Shown: piece after piece, positions 12,001-60,275 of the stretch
Layout: every line of letters starts with the position of its first letter
Position numbering within the stretch: the stretch's first letter is position 1
Source of the DNA: Vicugna vicugna
Lineage: Eukaryota
Direction of reading: 5' to 3'
NCBI GenBank assembly: GCA_013265495.1
Contig: MU057781.1
Span: 1,054,001-1,118,000, forward strand
DNA length: 64,000 nt
Position numbers and translations under genes: made by a program
The notes under the pieces: generated by a model
Seen by the model: the letters and a program-made list of their open reading frames with translations, nothing else
What the model was told of the DNA's origin: nothing
Databases searched by the model: none

Positions 12001-14829
12001 AGCCAGCTGTTTGTGTTCATTCCTGATGGGTGTCTAGTACGTACATCGCTTCCTCTGTGTTCTCGGGTGGAGAAGAGGCAACGTGGACGTGTGTTCTGAT
12101 TCTCTCTGCCCCTGGGCCCCCTGGGTGGGCCTGTACCGATGGACGCCCCCATTCTGTCCTGGCTGCCCAGGACAGATGCCTCCCCCCAGCTCTTGCCACA
12201 CCCCATGGCCCACCTGCCATTCCCTTCCCTCCCGCCTGAGCAGGTGCCCCCACCGCCCCGGCTCCCCTCAGGCCCTCTCCCCACCTCCCACACTGCCACT
12301 CACCTTTGCCCGGCTGGGCCCTCCCCCTGGACCCCCGCGGGCCTGCTCCTCCTCCAAGAAGGTCCCTTATGGTCACCATCGTCTCACCAGTTACCCCCGA
12401 CACCCTGGCTCCCGGCATGCAGACACTGCCGCCCGGCACACAGGGGACGCCCTGGACGCCAGACGCAGCAGTTCTCGCCTGGCCCCAGCCTATGCTTGGT
12501 CCTTTGGAAATTTGGGGTCAGCTGGGGCTCCTGGGGACCCTTTCCTCTGAGCCCAGCATGCTGGGTGCAGACGGAGACAAGTGTCTGAAATCAGAACCAC
12601 AGCTGGGTCTGAAGCCTGTGGGCCATCGGCAAATGCGAACCAGTTGCTCTTTTTTAACACCTGTGGCCTCTTCAAGCGGATGGCCAGGCAGCAGCACCAC
12701 AGCCCTTACCGCTGTTTAGACACAAACGTCGCAAGGAAACTTCTGAGGGGCCTTTTACCACTGCAGATCAGAACTTACTACACGAAACTTGCGAACGTAC
12801 TTTTGAAAAGAAGCGTCTTGTCCCAGCTCTGACACCCACGCCTCCGCCCAGTCAGGCGTTGCTCAGCGCTTGCAGACCCAGGAGATGCAGGCTCGGGACC
12901 TTCCCGGCCTGGCTGGCCAGGGGCTGGTTTCACCTCGGGCCATGGGGCTGTGTCCGCAGGGGTCAGGGCTGGGTGGTCTGCTCCTCCCCCGAGGGCCGGA
13001 TGCAGGGCTCCTCTGTCTGGCAGGGTGCAGAGGGTTCTGGAGGGCTGCACACAGCGGGTTCCTGGTGGGACCCCAGGGGCTCTGCCTCCACTAAGATTTT
13101 GAACCTGGTGCAGTCGGGGCACAGCAGGGCTGGCAGCTCCCAGAGAGGCAGGGCCAGCTGTACAGGTGCCCCGACCACCAGTGGTTTTGTACAAGTGGAG
13201 CAGCTGTCAAACCGCCCTTCTGGGCTGACGCTGGCGCCCAGGGCCTGTGGGCGCCCGTCCGGCAGCCTTGGTACCCGCGCAGCAGGTGTCCTCCCACGGC
13301 AGCAGCCGCTCCCTTAAGTTCCAAGCAAAACACCAGGCGCCCCAGGTACCAGTGGAGACCGTGCTGGGCCGCCTTGCCCCGCGACCTTCACGTGGCTGCT
13401 AATAATGAAGTAATCCTATATGGGTCTTTAAAAACAGCAGTTTGGGAATTTTTTTTCTCCTTTCAAAAGAGAAAATGCCTCTGTAAGTGGGTGAGCCAGA
13501 AAAGCCTGGCCTGGGGCTTTCTGCATGAGTGGTCACGGCTGCAGATTGAAAGGCCAGGGGAGAGGCCTGAATGCCCGGCCTGGGAGTCTTTAAAACCCGG
13601 TAAATGAGGTGGCTCCTGGCGGGTGTGGGAGAAAGGGCCCGGAGAGCCCGAGGCACGCGGAGGCCCCTCTGTGGGGCCGGGCTGGTCAGATGTGTATCCT
13701 TTGGGAGCGCGCCTGAAGTGTCGAGATAAAGCAATTTTTTAAGAAGTTTCCAGCAGACGCCTTTGGGAGAGACAGAATTTCCTGAATCGGGTCCTGGGGA
13801 GGCTACAGGCCGTCTGCCTGCCAAGCCCTCCGCATTCACCAGCGCTTAAGCCACTTAAGCGCATTAGCATCTGGATGGCGGCAGCTTCTGGCCGAGGGCT
13901 GGGCAGGGTGGCCGCTCTGGGCTGGATTGTCCCCTGCTTGTTCTAATCCGCGCCACTTGAAGGCGGCCAGACTGATTTGTGACACATGAGTCCAAAAGCC
14001 ACTTTGAGGGTCTTGACCTGATTAGCTGTCTGTGCTCTGAATGTCAATGCCTGCTGCAGTGCGTGTTGGGGACCGCGGCCCCCTGCCCGCCCTGGGCCAC
14101 GCGGCCGGGAGGGGCCCTGGTCCCGCTGCCCGCTGACGCGGGGCCCTGAGTCTCCAGGCTCCCCATGAAGTGTGGCCTCATGAGGGCTCAGCAGAGGAAA
14201 CTTTTTTCAAAAGTCAAAATCAGCTCCGTTGCCCTGGTCTTTTGCTTTTATAAAATTCTCTAAGCCTTTCTGGGAACACAGCTCTCATGATGTGTGACTT
14301 GCACCCAAACCGGATCCAGTTGTGACCGCTGGTCCCGCCCGGCCGGGCCGGCAGCCCAGGCTCCACTTTCTGCCCCGGGCCTACCCTCTCGGGACCAGAA
14401 GCGTGTGGGCCGCTCCCCCACATCCTCGCAGCGCGTCTCGTGAACGAGGGGGTCTCTCGGCCTAGGTGGGGCTCTACTCTCTCTCCGTGGCTCGGCGTGG
14501 CCTCAGCGCAGCCCTGTGGTGCCCAGCCGGCCCGTCCTGCGGCCCCTCCCTCTGTGCTCTGTGGCCCGGCCCTCGGCCCGCTGCCCTCCCGCAACCCCCA
14601 GCGCGTGGCCTCTGTTCCCCTCAACTTGCCCTCGGGTCCCGTCCGGCAGCCTGAAACATCACCGTCCCTCCCCCCTGGGCTGCGGAGGAGTCACCAGCCT
14701 GTTCTCGGCAAAGCCCTCGCAGACCTTCCCGGGTCGCCTGGTGGGCAGGGGGGCCAGCAGCGCTGCTGGTCACGCTCCCACTTCTGTGCGGGCGGATTTG
14801 TGCTCCCAGAGCCTCCTTCTCCCTCGGTG

Positions 14830-17224: not shown

Positions 17225-17404
17225 NNNNNNNNNNNNNNNNNNNNNNNNNNNNNNNNNNNNNNNNNNNNNNNNNNNNNNNNNNNNNNNNNNNNNNNNNNNN
17301 NNNNNNNNNNNNNNNNNNNNNNNNNNNNNNNNNNNNNNNNNNNNNNNNNNNNNNNNNNNNNNNNNNNNNNNNNNNNNNNNNNNNNNNNNNNNNNNNNNNN
17401 NNNN
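17225..17404. other. Assembly gap (180 N)
   Basis: N run; the other gaps are 34448-34723, 35556-35695, 45381-45425 and 53109-53244. Confidence 1.
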
Positions 17405-34447: not shown

Positions 34448-34723
34448 NNNNNNNNNNNNNNNNNNNNNNNNNNNNNNNNNNNNNNNNNNNNNNNNNNNNN
34501 NNNNNNNNNNNNNNNNNNNNNNNNNNNNNNNNNNNNNNNNNNNNNNNNNNNNNNNNNNNNNNNNNNNNNNNNNNNNNNNNNNNNNNNNNNNNNNNNNNNN
34601 NNNNNNNNNNNNNNNNNNNNNNNNNNNNNNNNNNNNNNNNNNNNNNNNNNNNNNNNNNNNNNNNNNNNNNNNNNNNNNNNNNNNNNNNNNNNNNNNNNNN
34701 NNNNNNNNNNNNNNNNNNNNNNN
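34448..34723 (-). CDS. NKX6-2: NKX6-2 exon 3 (VWFQNRR... to stop), inferred to lie wholly inside a 276-nt N gap
   Basis: Not visible. Intron 2 ends in ctgac plus pyrimidines just before the gap, 3'UTR follows it, and the gap fits the ~255 nt expected from orthologues. Confidence 0.6.
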
Positions 34724-35555
<832 letters not shown>

Positions 35556-35695
35556 NNNNNNNNNNNNNNNNNNNNNNNNNNNNNNNNNNNNNNNNNNNNN
35601 NNNNNNNNNNNNNNNNNNNNNNNNNNNNNNNNNNNNNNNNNNNNNNNNNNNNNNNNNNNNNNNNNNNNNNNNNNNNNNNNNNNNNNNNNNNNNNN

Positions 35696-45054: not shown

Positions 45055-45446
45055 TGGGGAGGAGCCTGAGGAAGAGGGGGAGACTAGGGAGGAGGGGGAG
45101 CCTGAGGAGGAGGGAAAGACTGGGGAGGAGGGAGAATCTTAGGGAGGAGGGAGAGACTGGGGAGGAGGGAGGAGCTTAGGGAGGAGGGGGAGCCTGAGGA
45201 GGAGGGAGAGACTGGGGAGGAGGGAGGAGCTGAGGGAGGAAGGGGAGCCTGGGGAGGAAGAAGGGGAGACTGGGGAGGAGGGAGAATCTTAGGGAGGAGG
45301 GAGAGACTGGGGAGGAGGGAGGAGCTTAGGGAGGAGGGGGAGCCTGAGGAGGAGGGAGAGACTGGGGAGGAGGGAGGAGCNNNNNNNNNNNNNNNNNNNN
45401 NNNNNNNNNNNNNNNNNNNNNNNNNGGAGCCTGGGGAGGAGGGGGC
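45055..45446. repeat. Polypurine minisatellite (~18-19-nt monomers, 150-nt higher-order unit) containing an N gap
   Basis: GGGGAGGAGGGAGA(G/A)-type monomers; the block at 45121 recurs at 45271. Confidence 0.9.
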
Positions 45447-53071: not shown

Positions 53072-53337
53072 ATCCGCGTCTTGTCGTGTGTGTCCATCTG
53101 TGTGTCTGNNNNNNNNNNNNNNNNNNNNNNNNNNNNNNNNNNNNNNNNNNNNNNNNNNNNNNNNNNNNNNNNNNNNNNNNNNNNNNNNNNNNNNNNNNNN
53201 NNNNNNNNNNNNNNNNNNNNNNNNNNNNNNNNNNNNNNNNNNNNTCTCTCTGTGTCTGTGTGTCTGTCTGTGTCTGTGTGTCTGTCTCTCAGTGTCTGTC
53301 TGTCTCTCTGTGTCTGTGTGTCTGTCTCTTGTGGTCT
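53041..53337. repeat. (TG)n followed by a compound (TGTC/TGTGTC/TC)n microsatellite containing an N gap
   Basis: Directly visible. Confidence 0.92.
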
Positions 53338-55109: not shown

Positions 55110-55534
55110 GAAGCGCTTCAACAACTCAGAGCCAGGGTGTGCAAGGCTTGGGGGGGGGTGCCCAACCGCCAGCCTCCTCCTGCTGCGGCCTGCGGGAGGC
55201 GGGTCCTCCACCCAGTGCCCGCACAGGGAGAGCCTGGAGCAGCCGAAGGCCTGAAGGTCCAGGCAGCTCTAGGGTCAGCGGGACACACCCCTCCCCCTCG
55301 CCCACACTGCCCAGCCCCCTCCCGGGGCCCCTGGCTTCAGGGTGGAGACTTGCAGGTGCCGTGCTGTGCAGAAGGGGGGGGTGGAGTCCCTGCCTGACAG
55401 CCTGGCGGGAGGTCACTGAAGGAGGGGCTCCACTGGGGAGACCCCAGAAAGGGGAGGAACTGGTCCAGGAAGGAAATGCTGAGCCGGCTGCGGAGAGGGC
55501 CTGCGGGGAGGGGCTGGGGGAGAAGGCGGCCCCG

Positions 55535-55659
55535 TCACACGATGGCCTGGTGCGGCAGCCCGTAGAGGACCATGTTGAGGGCGATGGGGAGCCGCTCTGC
55601 GCCCTGCAGCTGTGGCCGGAGCAGCGCCAGCTTGTCCTTCCAGGTCTGCAGAGGCTCGT
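55535..55659 (-). CDS. CFAP46: CFAP46 terminal coding exon, (D)EPLQTWKDKLALLRPQLQGAERLPIALNMVLYGLPHQAIV*
   Basis: ctcctcacag acceptor; TGA at 55537-55535; the nine exons total 809 nt in one continuous frame. Confidence 0.85.
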
Positions 55660-56601: not shown

Positions 56602-56738
56602 TCTCCCACAGGACGCTGGCCCGCATCGCATTGTCCTGCAGGACCGTCGGCCACTGGTTCGCCACGATGCTGCGGACCCCCACCAGACTCAGAAGGATGG
56701 CAGTCCGGACGGGCTCCTCCAGGGACAACCGGAGTGCA
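56602..56738 (-). CDS. CFAP46: CFAP46 137-nt coding exon, (S)ALRLSLEEPVRTAILLSLVGVRSIVANQWPTVLQDNAMRASVLWE(N)
   Basis: cctgcag acceptor, GTGAGT donor; bridges phase 2 to phase 1 and keeps an open frame to the terminal YGLP motif. Confidence 0.88.
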
Positions 56739-57370
56739 CTGCAGGGGACCGGGCTCCCGTGGGTGGCGCCCAGGGGCTCAGCCCGAGCCCTCCCCCACCC
56801 GCAGCCCAAGCACCCCACGTGGGGACGTGTATCTGGGCTGACAGCTCTTAAGGTTCTTGACAGCATCAAGAATCCTGCCCATCCTCCCCACACACCATTA
56901 AGCAACATTTAACAAGAAAGGTCATTTCTGAGTCCAGCCAAGTCCCTCCGGACGGCCCCCAGCCACAGGGTGGAGCCAGGAGGGAAGCGCCCCCAGGCAC
57001 GGGTGGTCCCCGCTCAGCCCGCAGCCCACAGAGGCCCTGGGGTGGCATGTGACATGTGAGCTGTGAAGCCAGGGTGTCCTCCGAGCTGCCAGCCCTCTGT
57101 CTCCCAGCTCAGTCCCAGCCGGCCTGTGGTCTGCTGGTGGAGCCGCCCTTTCCCCACCCCCACCCCCACCCCCAGGGGACTTTGCCATGGAAGGGTCTGG
57201 GGCAGAGCATGGAGCCCCCACACAGTCACGGTGCAGAGACAGTTGTGTCCCCCGCACTCCCCAGCGGCACACCCATGGCTCGGATTCCCCACCCCATGCC
57301 CTGTTGCCTGCCCCAGCTACCCGGGGGCCGGGCTGCGAGCTGCAGCCTGTGCAGAGGGGACGCCGGGCAC

Positions 57371-57452
57371 CTCTTGTTCTCCGAGGACTCCAGGCGCCGC
57401 CGCATGCTGGTGTAGGACCGCGTCAGGTCCAGCAGGACCATCACCTGGCAGT
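57371..57452 (-). CDS. CFAP46: CFAP46 coding exon, (D)CQVMVLLDLTRSYTSMRRRLESSENK(S)
   Basis: cacag acceptor, 82 nt, weak GTGCCC donor; phases consistent. Confidence 0.9.
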
Positions 57453-58370
57453 CTGTGGGTCACAGGAGGGCGGCTCAGCGCCCTGGGGGTCCTTGCAGGC
57501 GGGTGTCGCCCGCGGTGCAGGTGGACCACAGAAACCCACCCCACCTGCCTGGGACTCGGACTTGACGTCCCTTTTCTGGGCTGCACTGGCCGCACGGGCA
57601 TTATTTGCCTCAGGGCCCTACCCCCTCCACACTCCCCTAGGCGACCAGGCCAGGCAATGGGAGGGGCGGGCAGCCCTCCCTGCCCCGCACAGGGGCCTCG
57701 GCTCCCAGCCTCCGCCCAGGAGGGCCAGCGTCGGGATGCAGCGCTGGGCTGTGCTGTGCAGGTCCGGCCCCTGGAGGACAGGCTCTGGTTGGTGACGCTG
57801 TCAGCCCTGCAGGGCTGTGAGCCTGTGAGAGCTTCTATTTCATTCGCCATCTCATTCGAGAAGGTGGGAATTAAAGTTTCAAAGAGGTCTGTTTCCACCT
57901 CCCCTGGAGTATATGGGTCCCCCCAGCGGACAGCTTGTGGGGAGCCAGGTGACAGGGGCAGTTCAGGCGTCCTGACCACAGGACAAGTGTCCACGTGCCT
58001 GTGGTGCCAGCCTTAGTGGAGCCACGCTCAAGGGTAGGGGCCACCTGTGAGGGTCCCTGAAAAGGCTCCTCCAACTATGCACAGTGGCCACCTGCCCAGC
58101 AACCGCCCCAGGAGAAGGTCAGGCGCGGGCAGGCCCCATGGGGTGGGGGTGGGGGGCGCTGGGGGCACCGCCACCAGCAGACGGGACGACGGCACTGGGG
58201 GCCCGTATTCCACCTAGAAGGACAGGCAACGGGGGGCTGGGCCAGCTTTCCCAACCCCTGGAGGGCTGACCCCCAGCTCCGGACCCTGGCCCTGTCTCTC
58301 AGAGAAATGGAGGAGGGGTCCTGAGCAGAGGCCCCCTGTGCCTTCCTAAAGTGCCCCCCAGCCTTTGTCA

Positions 58371-58928
<558 letters not shown>

Positions 58929-59167
58929 TCACCACCCTGACCCCTGCAGGCTCGGCCCCACTCCTCCCGGAGCTCAGCCCCCGGAGCCCCACCCCCTCCG
59001 GGAGGGCCCCCCTGGGAGTCAGGACACACACACACACACACACTGTGCTGTACTGGCCGCGGGCCCTCGTGCAGGGTCACACACACCCCTGGGGGCCCAG
59101 GTCCTCAGCTAGGCCCTGCGAGGACCGAGGCACTGGAGGGCGTTGACAGGACAGAATGAGGGGATCA

Positions 59168-59467
<300 letters not shown>

Positions 59468-59784
59468 TCACAGGCAGGGCCCCTCCCCTCCTTGTGGAGG
59501 GCTTTACAGCCCAACTCCCAAGAGAAGAGCCAAAGGACGCTGTTCTCGAGCCGCAGTGGCGCCCCCGGTGCCCGTCCTCAGGGGTTCATCTCACTCATGT
59601 CCTGTCCCGGCTGCAGACGGCGAGGGCCGGGTGTCGGGCACACGAGGGTCCGCCCCCCACGGTCAGCGTAGCAGGAGGTGACCTCCGTGGGACAGAGGCC
59701 CAGGCACCCGGTCCATGCTGCCCAGGCCCGGGCCAGGCCAGTCCAGGCCGTGGGTGGCGTGTGGCATGTTGCGGGAGCTCTCAC

Positions 59785-59820
59785 CTGTGCCCTGGGCCTC
59801 CTCGTAGGGGTCCACCATGA
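59785..59820 (-). CDS. CFAP46: CFAP46 36-nt micro-exon, (F)MVDPYEEAQGT(E)
   Basis: ccag acceptor, GTGAGA donor, phase 1 to phase 1, preserves the frame. Confidence 0.9.
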
Positions 59821-59890
59821 CTGGGCCTTGGTTAAGGAGACACAGGGCCACGGGCTCAGGGGTTTGGGCGGCCAAGCCGTCAAAGGATAC
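59821..59890 (-). other. CFAP46: U12-type (minor spliceosome) GT-AG intron, 70 nt, in CFAP46
   Basis: 5' site GTATCCTTT; branch site TCCTTAAC at 59838-59831, about 11 nt before the CAG; no polypyrimidine tract. Confidence 0.92.
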
Positions 59891-59951
59891 ATCTGAAGTT
59901 GTCCGAGTCGATGGTGATGCAGTCTGCGGGGATGATCCGGGGCACGCTGCC
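59891..59951 (-). CDS. CFAP46: CFAP46 coding exon, GSVPRIIPADCITIDSDNFR(F)
   Basis: ctcgcag acceptor, 61 nt, followed by the U12-type donor GTATCCTTT. Confidence 0.9.
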
Positions 59952-60053
59952 CTGCGAGGACAGATGGGGTCCTCAGGGACGCGTCCCAGGACAGCCTCGG
60001 GCCCAGAGCTGGCAGCGGGGCCCCAGGATCCCCGCGGGGCCGCCACCACCTAC

Positions 60054-60124
60054 CTTCGGGCCCTTCTTTGCCGGGCCTCTCTTCTTGTGGTCTTTGCCTC
60101 TGGCCTCTTTCTTCGTGTTCCCCT
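60054..60124 (-). CDS. CFAP46: CFAP46 coding exon, (E)GNTKKEARGKDHKKRGPAKKGPK
   Basis: taacag acceptor, 71 nt (2+69), GTAGGT donor; Lys-rich linker in frame with the downstream exons. Confidence 0.85.
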
Positions 60125-60134
60125 CTGTTAAGAC

Positions 60135-60275
60135 AGTAATGAGAAGTGGTGATGTCTTGGAACCAGACAGAGGTGGTGGTACACATGTGAATGCTCCAAA
60201 TGCCACTGAATTCTTCACTTTAGGATGGTCAATTTTACATTATGTGAATTTCATCTCCATTAAAAAAAACAAGAA
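60135..60275 (+). mobile_element. L1MB/MC-type 3' end with A tail
   Basis: ggaaccagacagaggtggtggtacacatgtgaatgctccaaatgccactgaattcttcactttaggatggtcaattttacattatgtgaatttcatctccattaaaaaaaac follows the typical old-L1 terminus. Confidence 0.7.

What the first reader, a model, noticed from the sequence alone, without database searches (positions are those of the whole stretch)
59821..59890. Very short U12-type intron next to a 36-nt micro-exon in CFAP46
Seen: GTATCCTTT donor, TCCTTAAC branch box with the branch A about 11 nt from the CAG, and no pyrimidine tract. Known: these are the U11 and U12 recognition consensus sequences; minor introns are rare, slowly spliced and reported as enriched among cilia genes, and RNU4ATAC defects impair cilia. 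Inference: CFAP46 is a minor-intron gene, and splicing of this unusually small (70-nt) intron at the start of the separase-like domain could gate full-length protein. Retention shifts the frame.
Basis: partly seen in the sequence, partly recalled or inferred. Interest (0 to 1): 0.7.

Follow-up and report, generated by a model that had tools for sequence, protein, structure and literature searches.

The report
Known very short CFAP46 minor intron
This is a real, transcript-confirmed 70-base minor-spliceosome (U12-type) intron in the cilia gene CFAP46, but its human and mouse counterparts are already listed in the minor-intron database, so it is a correct observation of a known feature.

Summary
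On the minus strand, 59890..59821 is a 70-nt GT-AG intron. It has a perfect U12-type donor (GTATCCTTT) and branch box (TCCTTAAC), with the branch A 11 nt from the 3' end. The combined pattern is unique in the window (0.01 expected by chance).

RNA contigs from four runs in four studies splice exactly at these boundaries. They also define the flanking 61-nt exon and the 36-nt exon. The spliced product aligns without a gap to solved CFAP46 (PDB 9ijj_A, residues 2394-2464). Retention gives a stop after three codons and shifts the frame.

It is not new. The MIDB paper (PMC6717393) already lists the orthologous minor intron: 73 nt in human and 75 nt in mouse, with the same donor.

What I add:
- At 73 nt it is the shortest minor intron in that paper's human list; the next is 82 nt.
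- The donor and the 61/36-nt exon layout are conserved in bird (92-nt intron), toad (133 nt) and paddlefish (1,068 nt). The intron is therefore ancient and its shortness is derived.
- It lies inside the separase-like (Peptidase_C50) domain, not at its start.

The idea that it gates full-length protein is untested. Two notes cover other U12 introns in this genome.

The parts
60054..60128 (-). CFAP46 coding exon upstream of the 102-nt intron, encoding the K-rich linker TEGNTKKEARGKDHKKRGPAKKGPK. Its 5' boundary lies within 60124-60128.
   Evidence: RNA contigs cover 60053-60128 and join to 59951. The reading frame is open. It aligns to 9ijj_A from residue 2394.
59952..60053 (-). 102-nt U2-type intron (GTAGGT...CAG).
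   Evidence: Joint 59951>60054 in X1, X3 and X7. One X8 contig (59939-60082) runs through it.
59891..59951 (-). 61-nt coding exon (GSVPRIIPADCITIDSDNFR plus 1 nt, ending in phase 1).
   Evidence: The same 61-nt length is found in bird, toad and paddlefish.
59821..59890 (-). 70-nt U12-type GT-AG intron, phase 1.
   Evidence: Sequence. The pattern is unique, with 0.01 expected by chance. The exact joint appears in 4 RNA runs with no ambiguity. It is orthologous to the MIDB minor introns of human (73 nt) and mouse (75 nt).
59882..59890 (-). U12-type 5' splice site GTATCCTTT (U11/U6atac recognition sequence).
   Evidence: The nine bases are identical in human and mouse, bird, toad and paddlefish.
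59831..59838 (-). U12-type branch point sequence TCCTTAAC. The presumed branch A is at 59832, 11 nt from the intron's last base.
   Evidence: The 11-13 nt optimum distance is quoted in PMC6717393.
59785..59820 (-). 36-nt small exon ((F)MVDPYEEAQGT), followed by a U2-type donor GTGAGA.
   Evidence: Joints 59382>59785 and 59820>59891 in all 4 runs. It aligns to VVDPYEEARGT of 9ijj_A. It is 36 nt in bird, toad and paddlefish too.
59383..59784 (-). 402-nt U2-type intron.
   Evidence: Joint in 4 runs.
59280..59382 (-). 103-nt coding exon.
   Evidence: It matches 9ijj_A residues 2433-2464.
58484..58596 (-). 113-nt coding exon carrying FFFYGME, the position expected for the separase His-Gly site.
   Evidence: It matches 9ijj_A residues 2466-2502 at E = 1.4e-14.
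57371..57452 (-). 82-nt coding exon carrying VLLDLTRS, the position expected for the separase Cys site.
56602..56738 (-). 137-nt coding exon. Its 5' end is supported by RNA; its 3' end is read from the sequence.
   Evidence: The contig loose end maps to 56709-56738. Sequence. It aligns in paddlefish and toad.
55534..55659 (-). Last coding exon, ending ...ALNMVLYGLPHQAIV-stop. Its boundaries are read from the sequence only.
   Evidence: The VLYGLP motif is conserved in alignment A1 and in 9ijj_A.

Best explanation
The stretch 59890..59821 (minus strand) is the orthologue, in a placental mammal, of the known minor (U12-type, GT-AG) intron of CFAP46.

Inferred mechanism: the preformed U11/U12 di-snRNP recognises the donor GTATCCTTT (through U11, later U6atac) and the branch box TCCTTAAC (through U12, bulging the second A) together across the very short intron, i.e. 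by intron definition. It cuts 11 nt downstream of the branch A at CAG. This joins a 61-nt exon to a 36-nt exon in phase 1, inside the C-terminal separase-like domain at about residue 2419 of roughly 2,640.

Shown: the exact boundaries in RNA, the gene identity, orthology to the catalogued human and mouse minor introns, conservation of the donor and exon layout to a ray-finned fish, and the effect of retention on the reading frame.

Inferred: dependence on the minor spliceosome, from sequence and catalogue classification only. Also inferred is that a retained transcript would be degraded by nonsense-mediated decay or would encode a protein lacking the last ~220 residues. The stop lies upstream of six more exon junctions.
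For: - Perfect U12 donor and branch box at the right spacing. The combined pattern is unique, 0.01 expected by chance.
- The exact 70-nt joint appears in RNA contigs of 4 runs from 4 studies with zero positional ambiguity, together with both neighbouring joints.
- The reading frame is open across 6 spliced exons, and retention gives C-I-L-stop.
- Exons match PDB 9ijj_A 'Cilia and flagella associated protein 46'. The alignment is ungapped over 71 residues across both junctions, E = 1.4e-24.
- The MIDB paper PMC6717393 lists human chr10:132814613-132814685 CFAP46 (73 nt) and mouse chr7:139607115-139607189 Cfap46 (75 nt) as minor introns. It classes them as conserved in 'Both', with 5'SS AGTGTATCCTTT and BPS TCCTTGAC, scoring about 95-96 and about 89-90.
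- GTATCCTTT plus the 61-nt/36-nt exon architecture is conserved in bird (92-nt intron), toad (133 nt) and paddlefish (1,068 nt, with CCCTTAAT 13 nt from the AG).
- Mouse Cfap46 is named among the few MIGs/GOIs (genes whose top-ranked intron is minor, or minor-like/hybrid) differentially expressed in U11-null testis (PMC12956336).
Against: - No experiment seen here shows that this particular intron needs the minor spliceosome.
- The U11-null expression change in mouse Cfap46 could be secondary to loss of spermatids.
- The RNA contigs are 95-99% identical to the window, so they probably come from a close relative or another breed, not the same animal.
- The bird (TGATTAAC) and toad (TTCTTTAC) branch boxes are degenerate. 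In some lineages the intron might be classed as minor-like or hybrid.
Confidence: 0.93

Rival explanations
1. Regulatory gate. Because the intron is so short and of the minor class, it is spliced inefficiently. Its retention is used to set the amount of full-length CFAP46 in ciliated and spermatogenic cells.
For: - PMC6717393 reports that shorter minor introns are retained more, and that testis-upregulated minor-intron genes, Cfap46 among them, are enriched for cilium assembly.
- Retention would give an immediate stop.
- Cfap46 expression changes in U11-null testis.
- The intron has shrunk from 1,068 nt in paddlefish to 70-75 nt in mammals.
Against: - No contig retaining the 70-nt intron was seen in 4 RNA runs, whereas one contig retains the neighbouring 102-nt U2 intron. 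Contigs are not quantitative.
- Intron shrinkage fits the general compaction of this GC-rich locus, where neighbouring introns are also 102-402 nt.
- A short distance may help rather than hinder the U11/U12 di-snRNP, which binds both sites at once.
Confidence: 0.15
2. A U12 look-alike that the major (U2-type) spliceosome actually removes.
For: - It has GT-AG ends.
- Intron class conversion is known to occur.
- The branch boxes in bird and toad are weak.
Against: - The donor AT|GTATCC matches the U1 consensus poorly.
- All nine donor bases are invariant from fish to mammals, which is the signature of U11/U6atac pairing.
- The branch box pairs perfectly with U12 and sits 11 nt from the AG.
- MIDB classes the human and mouse orthologues as minor, not as minor-like or hybrid.
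Confidence: 0.04
3. A chance motif pair, with no intron at these coordinates.
For: A second GTATCCTTT occurs by chance at 13694 (+).
Against: - The exact spliced joint appears in 4 RNA runs.
- The protein alignment runs ungapped across the junction.
- The combined pattern is expected only 0.01 times by chance.
Confidence: 0.01

Closest known systems
Human CFAP46 and mouse Cfap46 minor intron as listed in MIDB (Olthof et al. 2019, PMC6717393, supplementary tables)
   Same: - Same gene and same position: phase 1, between the 61-nt exon and the 36-nt exon.
- Identical donor GTATCCTTT.
- Same GT-AG subtype and the same strand relation.
- Nearly the same length (73 and 75 nt, against 70 nt here).
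   Different: The branch box here is TCCTTAAC, the full consensus, whereas human and mouse have TCCTTGAC. The intron is 3-5 nt shorter here. The species differs.
Other short human minor introns in MIDB 2019 (MATN4 82 nt, SBNO1 91, C19orf54 91, EML2 92, DRAP1 95)
   Same: Minor introns at the extreme short end of the length distribution.
   Different: The CFAP46 intron is shorter than all of them.
Minor introns of other axonemal and central-apparatus genes (CFAP74 109 nt, CFAP44, CFAP69, SPAG16, SPAG17, DRC3)
   Same: Motile-cilium genes that carry a U12-type intron. CFAP74 belongs to the same C1d projection as CFAP46, according to the title of reference 74 in PMC12956336.
   Different: These are different genes with unrelated intron positions. 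Most of these introns are kilobases long.

Membership tests
U12-type (minor-spliceosome) GT-AG intron | 5' splice site matching /RTATCCTTT | tested here: met
   GTATCCTTT at 59890-59882 on the minus strand.
U12-type (minor-spliceosome) GT-AG intron | Branch point sequence TCCTTRAC close to the 3' splice site (optimum 11-13 nt) | tested here: met
   TCCTTAAC at 59838-59831, with the branch A 11 nt from the last intron base. The optimum distance is quoted in PMC6717393.
U12-type (minor-spliceosome) GT-AG intron | No polypyrimidine tract between the branch site and the AG | tested here: met
   The sequence is CCAAGGCCCAG. This feature does not discriminate here, because neighbouring U2 introns also score 12/20 pyrimidines.
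U12-type (minor-spliceosome) GT-AG intron | Actually excised from RNA at the predicted boundaries | tested here: met
   Joint 59820>59891 in 4 RNA runs with no ambiguity.
U12-type (minor-spliceosome) GT-AG intron | Orthologous to an intron classified as minor by a curated catalogue | tested here: met
   MIDB human and mouse entries. Orthology is shown by the protein alignment.
U12-type (minor-spliceosome) GT-AG intron | Extended donor motif conserved across distant species | tested here: met
   GTATCCTTT is invariant in bird, toad and paddlefish and in human and mouse.
U12-type (minor-spliceosome) GT-AG intron | Splicing depends on U11/U12/U4atac/U6atac | not testable with these tools
   The only indirect evidence is that mouse Cfap46 is differentially expressed in U11-null testis (PMC12956336).
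Peptidase C50 (separase)-like domain at the CFAP46 C-terminus | Significant match to Pfam PF03568 | tested here: met
   Scores against a cutoff of 27.8 bits: Varanus 47.8, bird 36.8, Tamandua 25.5 (below cutoff). Precomputed PF03568 hits are listed for many orthologues.
Peptidase C50 (separase)-like domain at the CFAP46 C-terminus | Catalytic His and Cys present | tested here: inconclusive
   Alignment A1 shows YG[M/T]E and LLDL/LSEL at the positions I expect for the separase GHG and GCS sites. No direct alignment to a solved separase was obtained.
Microexon | Exon of about 30 nt or less (common definitions use 3-27 or 3-30 nt) | tested here: not met
   The exon is 36 nt. It is a small exon, and counts as a microexon only under looser definitions (up to 51 nt). 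The definitions come from my own knowledge.

The most novel reading that the evidence does not exclude
In mammals the CFAP46 minor intron has been compacted to about the smallest size the U11/U12 di-snRNP can handle; it is the shortest in the human catalogue. This would make CFAP46 an unusually sensitive reporter, or bottleneck, of minor-spliceosome activity in spermatids and multiciliated cells. Through loss of the C1d projection, it could contribute to the motile-cilia and sperm-tail defects seen when minor splicing is impaired.
Probability: 0.1. Interest if true: 0.5.

Novelty: already known. Interest (0 to 1): 0.2.

Why it matters
[quoted passage not shown] Minor-spliceosome disorders show ciliary defects (PMC9992838). 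CFAP46's dependence on minor splicing is therefore medically relevant, but it is already in the catalogues.

The modest additions here:
- This is the shortest minor intron in the human MIDB 2019 list.
- Its donor and the 61/36-nt exon layout have been fixed since the common ancestor of ray-finned fish and tetrapods, while its length fell from about 1 kb to about 70 nt.
- That makes it a convenient natural test case for the lower size limit of minor-intron recognition and for intron-definition recognition by the U11/U12 di-snRNP.

Tried and rejected
I then laid 57000-60200 only and did not send those places again.
- Full-length CFAP46 loci of Varanus (gene range too long) and of the bird, gar and Xenopus isoforms (not on record) could not be fetched. 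I used a partial bird model, paddlefish and spadefoot toad instead.
- A single sequence and a 12-sequence profile of the CFAP46 C-terminus did not reach solved separases in the PDB at E<1. They found only CFAP46 itself and Chlamydomonas FAP46. The catalytic-residue question is therefore left inconclusive.
- The second GTATCCTTT at 13694 (+) shares only 11 nt with the CFAP46 site, has stop codons in all upstream frames and shows no paralogy. I rejected it as chance.
- No supplementary tables were held for PMC12956336 or PMC9992838. [quoted passage not shown]
- Invertebrate, teleost and Chlamydomonas gene structures were not examined.
- The mouse sheet of the MIDB list was not read in full, so 'shortest' is established for the human list only.

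Full report
**Observation.** Read on the minus strand, the window shows ...AACTTCAGAT | GTATCCTTTGACGG...GTGTCTCCTTAACCAAGGCCCAG | TCATGGTGGACCCCTACGAGGAGGCCCAGGGCACAG | GTGAGAGC. The intron is 59890..59821, 70 nt. The donor GTATCCTTT (59890-59882) and the branch box TCCTTAAC (59838-59831) are exact matches to the U12-type consensus. The second A of the box (59832) lies 11 nt from the last base of the intron. GTATCCTTT alone is expected 0.07 times in the window. The combined donor-gap-branch box-gap-AG pattern occurs once, with 0.01 expected. There is no pyrimidine tract between the branch box and the AG. That is not diagnostic here, because the neighbouring U2-type introns of this GC-rich gene have equally weak tracts.

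**Transcript evidence.** Fourteen RNA runs hold about a fifth to a quarter of the sampled words of the region, as expected if only exons are present. I laid contigs from four runs belonging to four studies on 57000-60200. All four show the joint 59820>59891, which skips exactly 70 nt with GT..AG on the minus strand and no positional ambiguity. The neighbouring joints are 59382>59785, 59951>60054, 58596>59280 and 57452>58484. This fixes a 61-nt exon (59951-59891), the 70-nt intron, a 36-nt exon (59820-59785) and a 402-nt intron. The contigs are 95-99% identical to the window, so they probably come from a close relative or a different breed. No contig retains the 70-nt intron. One X8 contig runs through the 102-nt upstream intron.

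**Gene and frame.** Joining the RNA-supported exons gives one open frame. Single exons match PDB chain 9ijj_A, 'Cilia and flagella associated protein 46', at residues 2433-2464 and 2466-2502. A 71-residue peptide spanning both junctions of the small exon aligns without a gap to residues 2394-2464 at E = 1.4e-24. The intron therefore interrupts codon ~2419 of a ~2,640-residue protein, in phase 1. Retaining it adds C-I-L and then a TGA stop, and shifts the frame. Six further exon junctions lie downstream, so I infer that a retained transcript would be a target of nonsense-mediated decay.

**Is it known? Yes.** The supplementary tables of the MIDB paper (Olthof et al. 2019, PMC6717393) list a minor intron in human CFAP46 (chr10:132814613-132814685, 73 nt, minus strand). 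They also list one in mouse Cfap46 (chr7:139607115-139607189, 75 nt, minus strand). Both are classed as conserved in 'Both' species, with 5'SS AGTGTATCCTTT in each. The branch sequences are TTCTCCTTGACC in human and TTGTCCTTGACT in mouse. Scores are about 95-96 for the donor and about 89-90 for the branch site. The same paper lists Cfap46 among testis-upregulated minor-intron genes enriched for cilium assembly, and reports that shorter minor introns are retained more. A 2026 paper on U11 ablation in mouse testis names Cfap46 among the few MIGs/GOIs (genes whose top-ranked intron is minor, or minor-like/hybrid) that were differentially expressed (PMC12956336). PMC9992838 reports 86 cilium-related U12 genes, and ciliary defects in U4atac deficiency.

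**How short is it?** I read the whole 'Human' sheet of the MIDB intron table. At 73 nt, the CFAP46 intron is the shortest human minor intron listed. The next are MATN4 (82), SBNO1 and C19orf54 (91), EML2 (92) and DRAP1 (95). 'Unusually small' is therefore justified. I did not read the whole mouse sheet.

**Conservation.** A deep protein search with the 37-residue exon found CFAP46 in mammals, birds, reptiles and amphibians. A word-indexed search added sturgeon, paddlefish, gar and a shark. Three loci could be fetched.

| Species | Locus | Upstream exon | Donor | Intron | Branch region | Small exon |
|---|---|---|---|---|---|---|
| Bird (Polioptila caerulea) | L001 | 61 nt | GTATCCTTT | 92 nt | TGATTAAC, about 12 nt from the AG | 36 nt |
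| Toad (Spea bombifrons) | L003 | 61 nt | GTATCCTTT | 133 nt | TTCTTTAC, about 13 nt from the AG | 36 nt |
| Paddlefish (Polyodon spathula) | L002 | 61 nt | GTATCCTTT | 1,068 nt | CCCTTAAT, 13 nt from the AG | 36 nt |

The nine-base donor and the 61/36-nt exon layout have thus been fixed since the common ancestor of ray-finned fish and tetrapods. The intron length fell from about 1 kb to 70-75 nt in mammals. Invariance of all nine donor bases is what pairing to U11/U6atac predicts; recognition by U1 would not require it. The weaker branch boxes in bird and toad mean some catalogues might call those orthologues minor-like.

**Domain context.** Pfam Peptidase_C50 (separase) matches the C-terminal ~400 residues of CFAP46. 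It scores above the 27.8-bit cutoff in Varanus (47.8 bits) and a bird (36.8 bits), and just below it in a mammal (25.5 bits). Many orthologues carry precomputed PF03568 hits. In a 12-species alignment (A1), the conserved block ILLADKLLMELPLEAL...VSRDFSLQ lies about 70-100 residues before the intron position. This block resembles the separase 'LDK..L..PWE.L...R.PS' motif. A lysine-rich linker follows it. A profile of A1 also finds Chlamydomonas FAP46, which has ...LLLDPALQSLPWEA...VSRSPSLQ. The intron therefore sits inside the separase-like domain, between its first conserved block and the FFYG[M/T]E and LLDL strands, and not at its start. These two strands stand where I would expect the catalytic His-Gly and Cys. 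That suggests an inactive fold, but I obtained no direct alignment to a solved separase, so the point is left open.

**Mechanism.** The most likely reading (0.93) is an ordinary, constitutive minor-spliceosome intron. The U11/U12 di-snRNP would recognise it across the intron itself, since the 36-nt downstream exon is too small for comfortable exon definition. The exon-definition argument is inference from general knowledge. It would need read-level retention measurements and data from minor-spliceosome-deficient cells. Removal by the major spliceosome (0.04) and a chance motif (0.01 or less, refuted by RNA) are unlikely.

**Verdict.** What is added here is modest:
- it is the shortest minor intron in the human list;
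- it shows deep conservation of the donor and exon layout with progressive shortening;
- its position is inside the separase-like domain rather than at its start.

Earlier scan notes hold nothing on this intron. Two notes on other U12 introns of the same genome exist, and one of them calls the genome alpaca, which I did not test.

Noticed in passing
window 13694-13702 (+): A second exact GTATCCTTT, inside TCAGATGTGTATCCTTTG, superficially like the CFAP46 donor context. The shared match is only 11 nt. There are stops in all three upstream frames and no paralogy to the CFAP46 exon. It is probably chance.
   Followed up: partly
window 59939-60082 and 57371-58057 (RNA run X8): One X8 contig runs through the 102-nt U2-type intron and another through about 600 nt of the 1,031-nt intron. 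This could be unspliced pre-mRNA or contaminating DNA. No such contig covers the 70-nt intron.
   Followed up: no
Rhinatrema bivittatum 'CFAP46-like' protein P0031 (no DNA obtained): A 407-residue model occupies a gene range of only 1,224 nt, so it is intronless. It has a weak Separin_C hit. It may be a retrocopy of the CFAP46 C-terminal domain in a caecilian, alongside the full-length gene (P0153).
   Followed up: no
MIDB 2019 human list (PMC6717393, supplementary file 2): Several axonemal and central-apparatus genes carry minor introns: CFAP74 (109 nt, the same C1d projection as CFAP46), CFAP44, CFAP69, SPAG16, SPAG17 and DRC3.
   Followed up: no
alignment A1, columns ~228-236: At the position expected for the separase catalytic His, the amniotes in the alignment have YGME (two lizards SGME). 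The fish, the shark and two of the three amphibians have YGTE (FGTE in the newt); the caecilian has YGME. This is a largely lineage-specific substitution in a probably inactive site.
   Followed up: no
alignment A1, last ~90 columns (Tamandua P0016 isoform X2): The Tamandua model loses the conserved ...VLYGLPN C-terminal motif and ends in an unrelated Pro/Arg-rich tail. This suggests an alternative or mis-annotated 3' end. The window itself encodes the conserved ending (ALNMVLYGLPHQAIV-stop at 55534-55659).
   Followed up: no
window 17225-17404, 34448-34723, 35556-35695, 45381-45425, 53109-53244: Five runs of N (777 bases in all).
   Followed up: no
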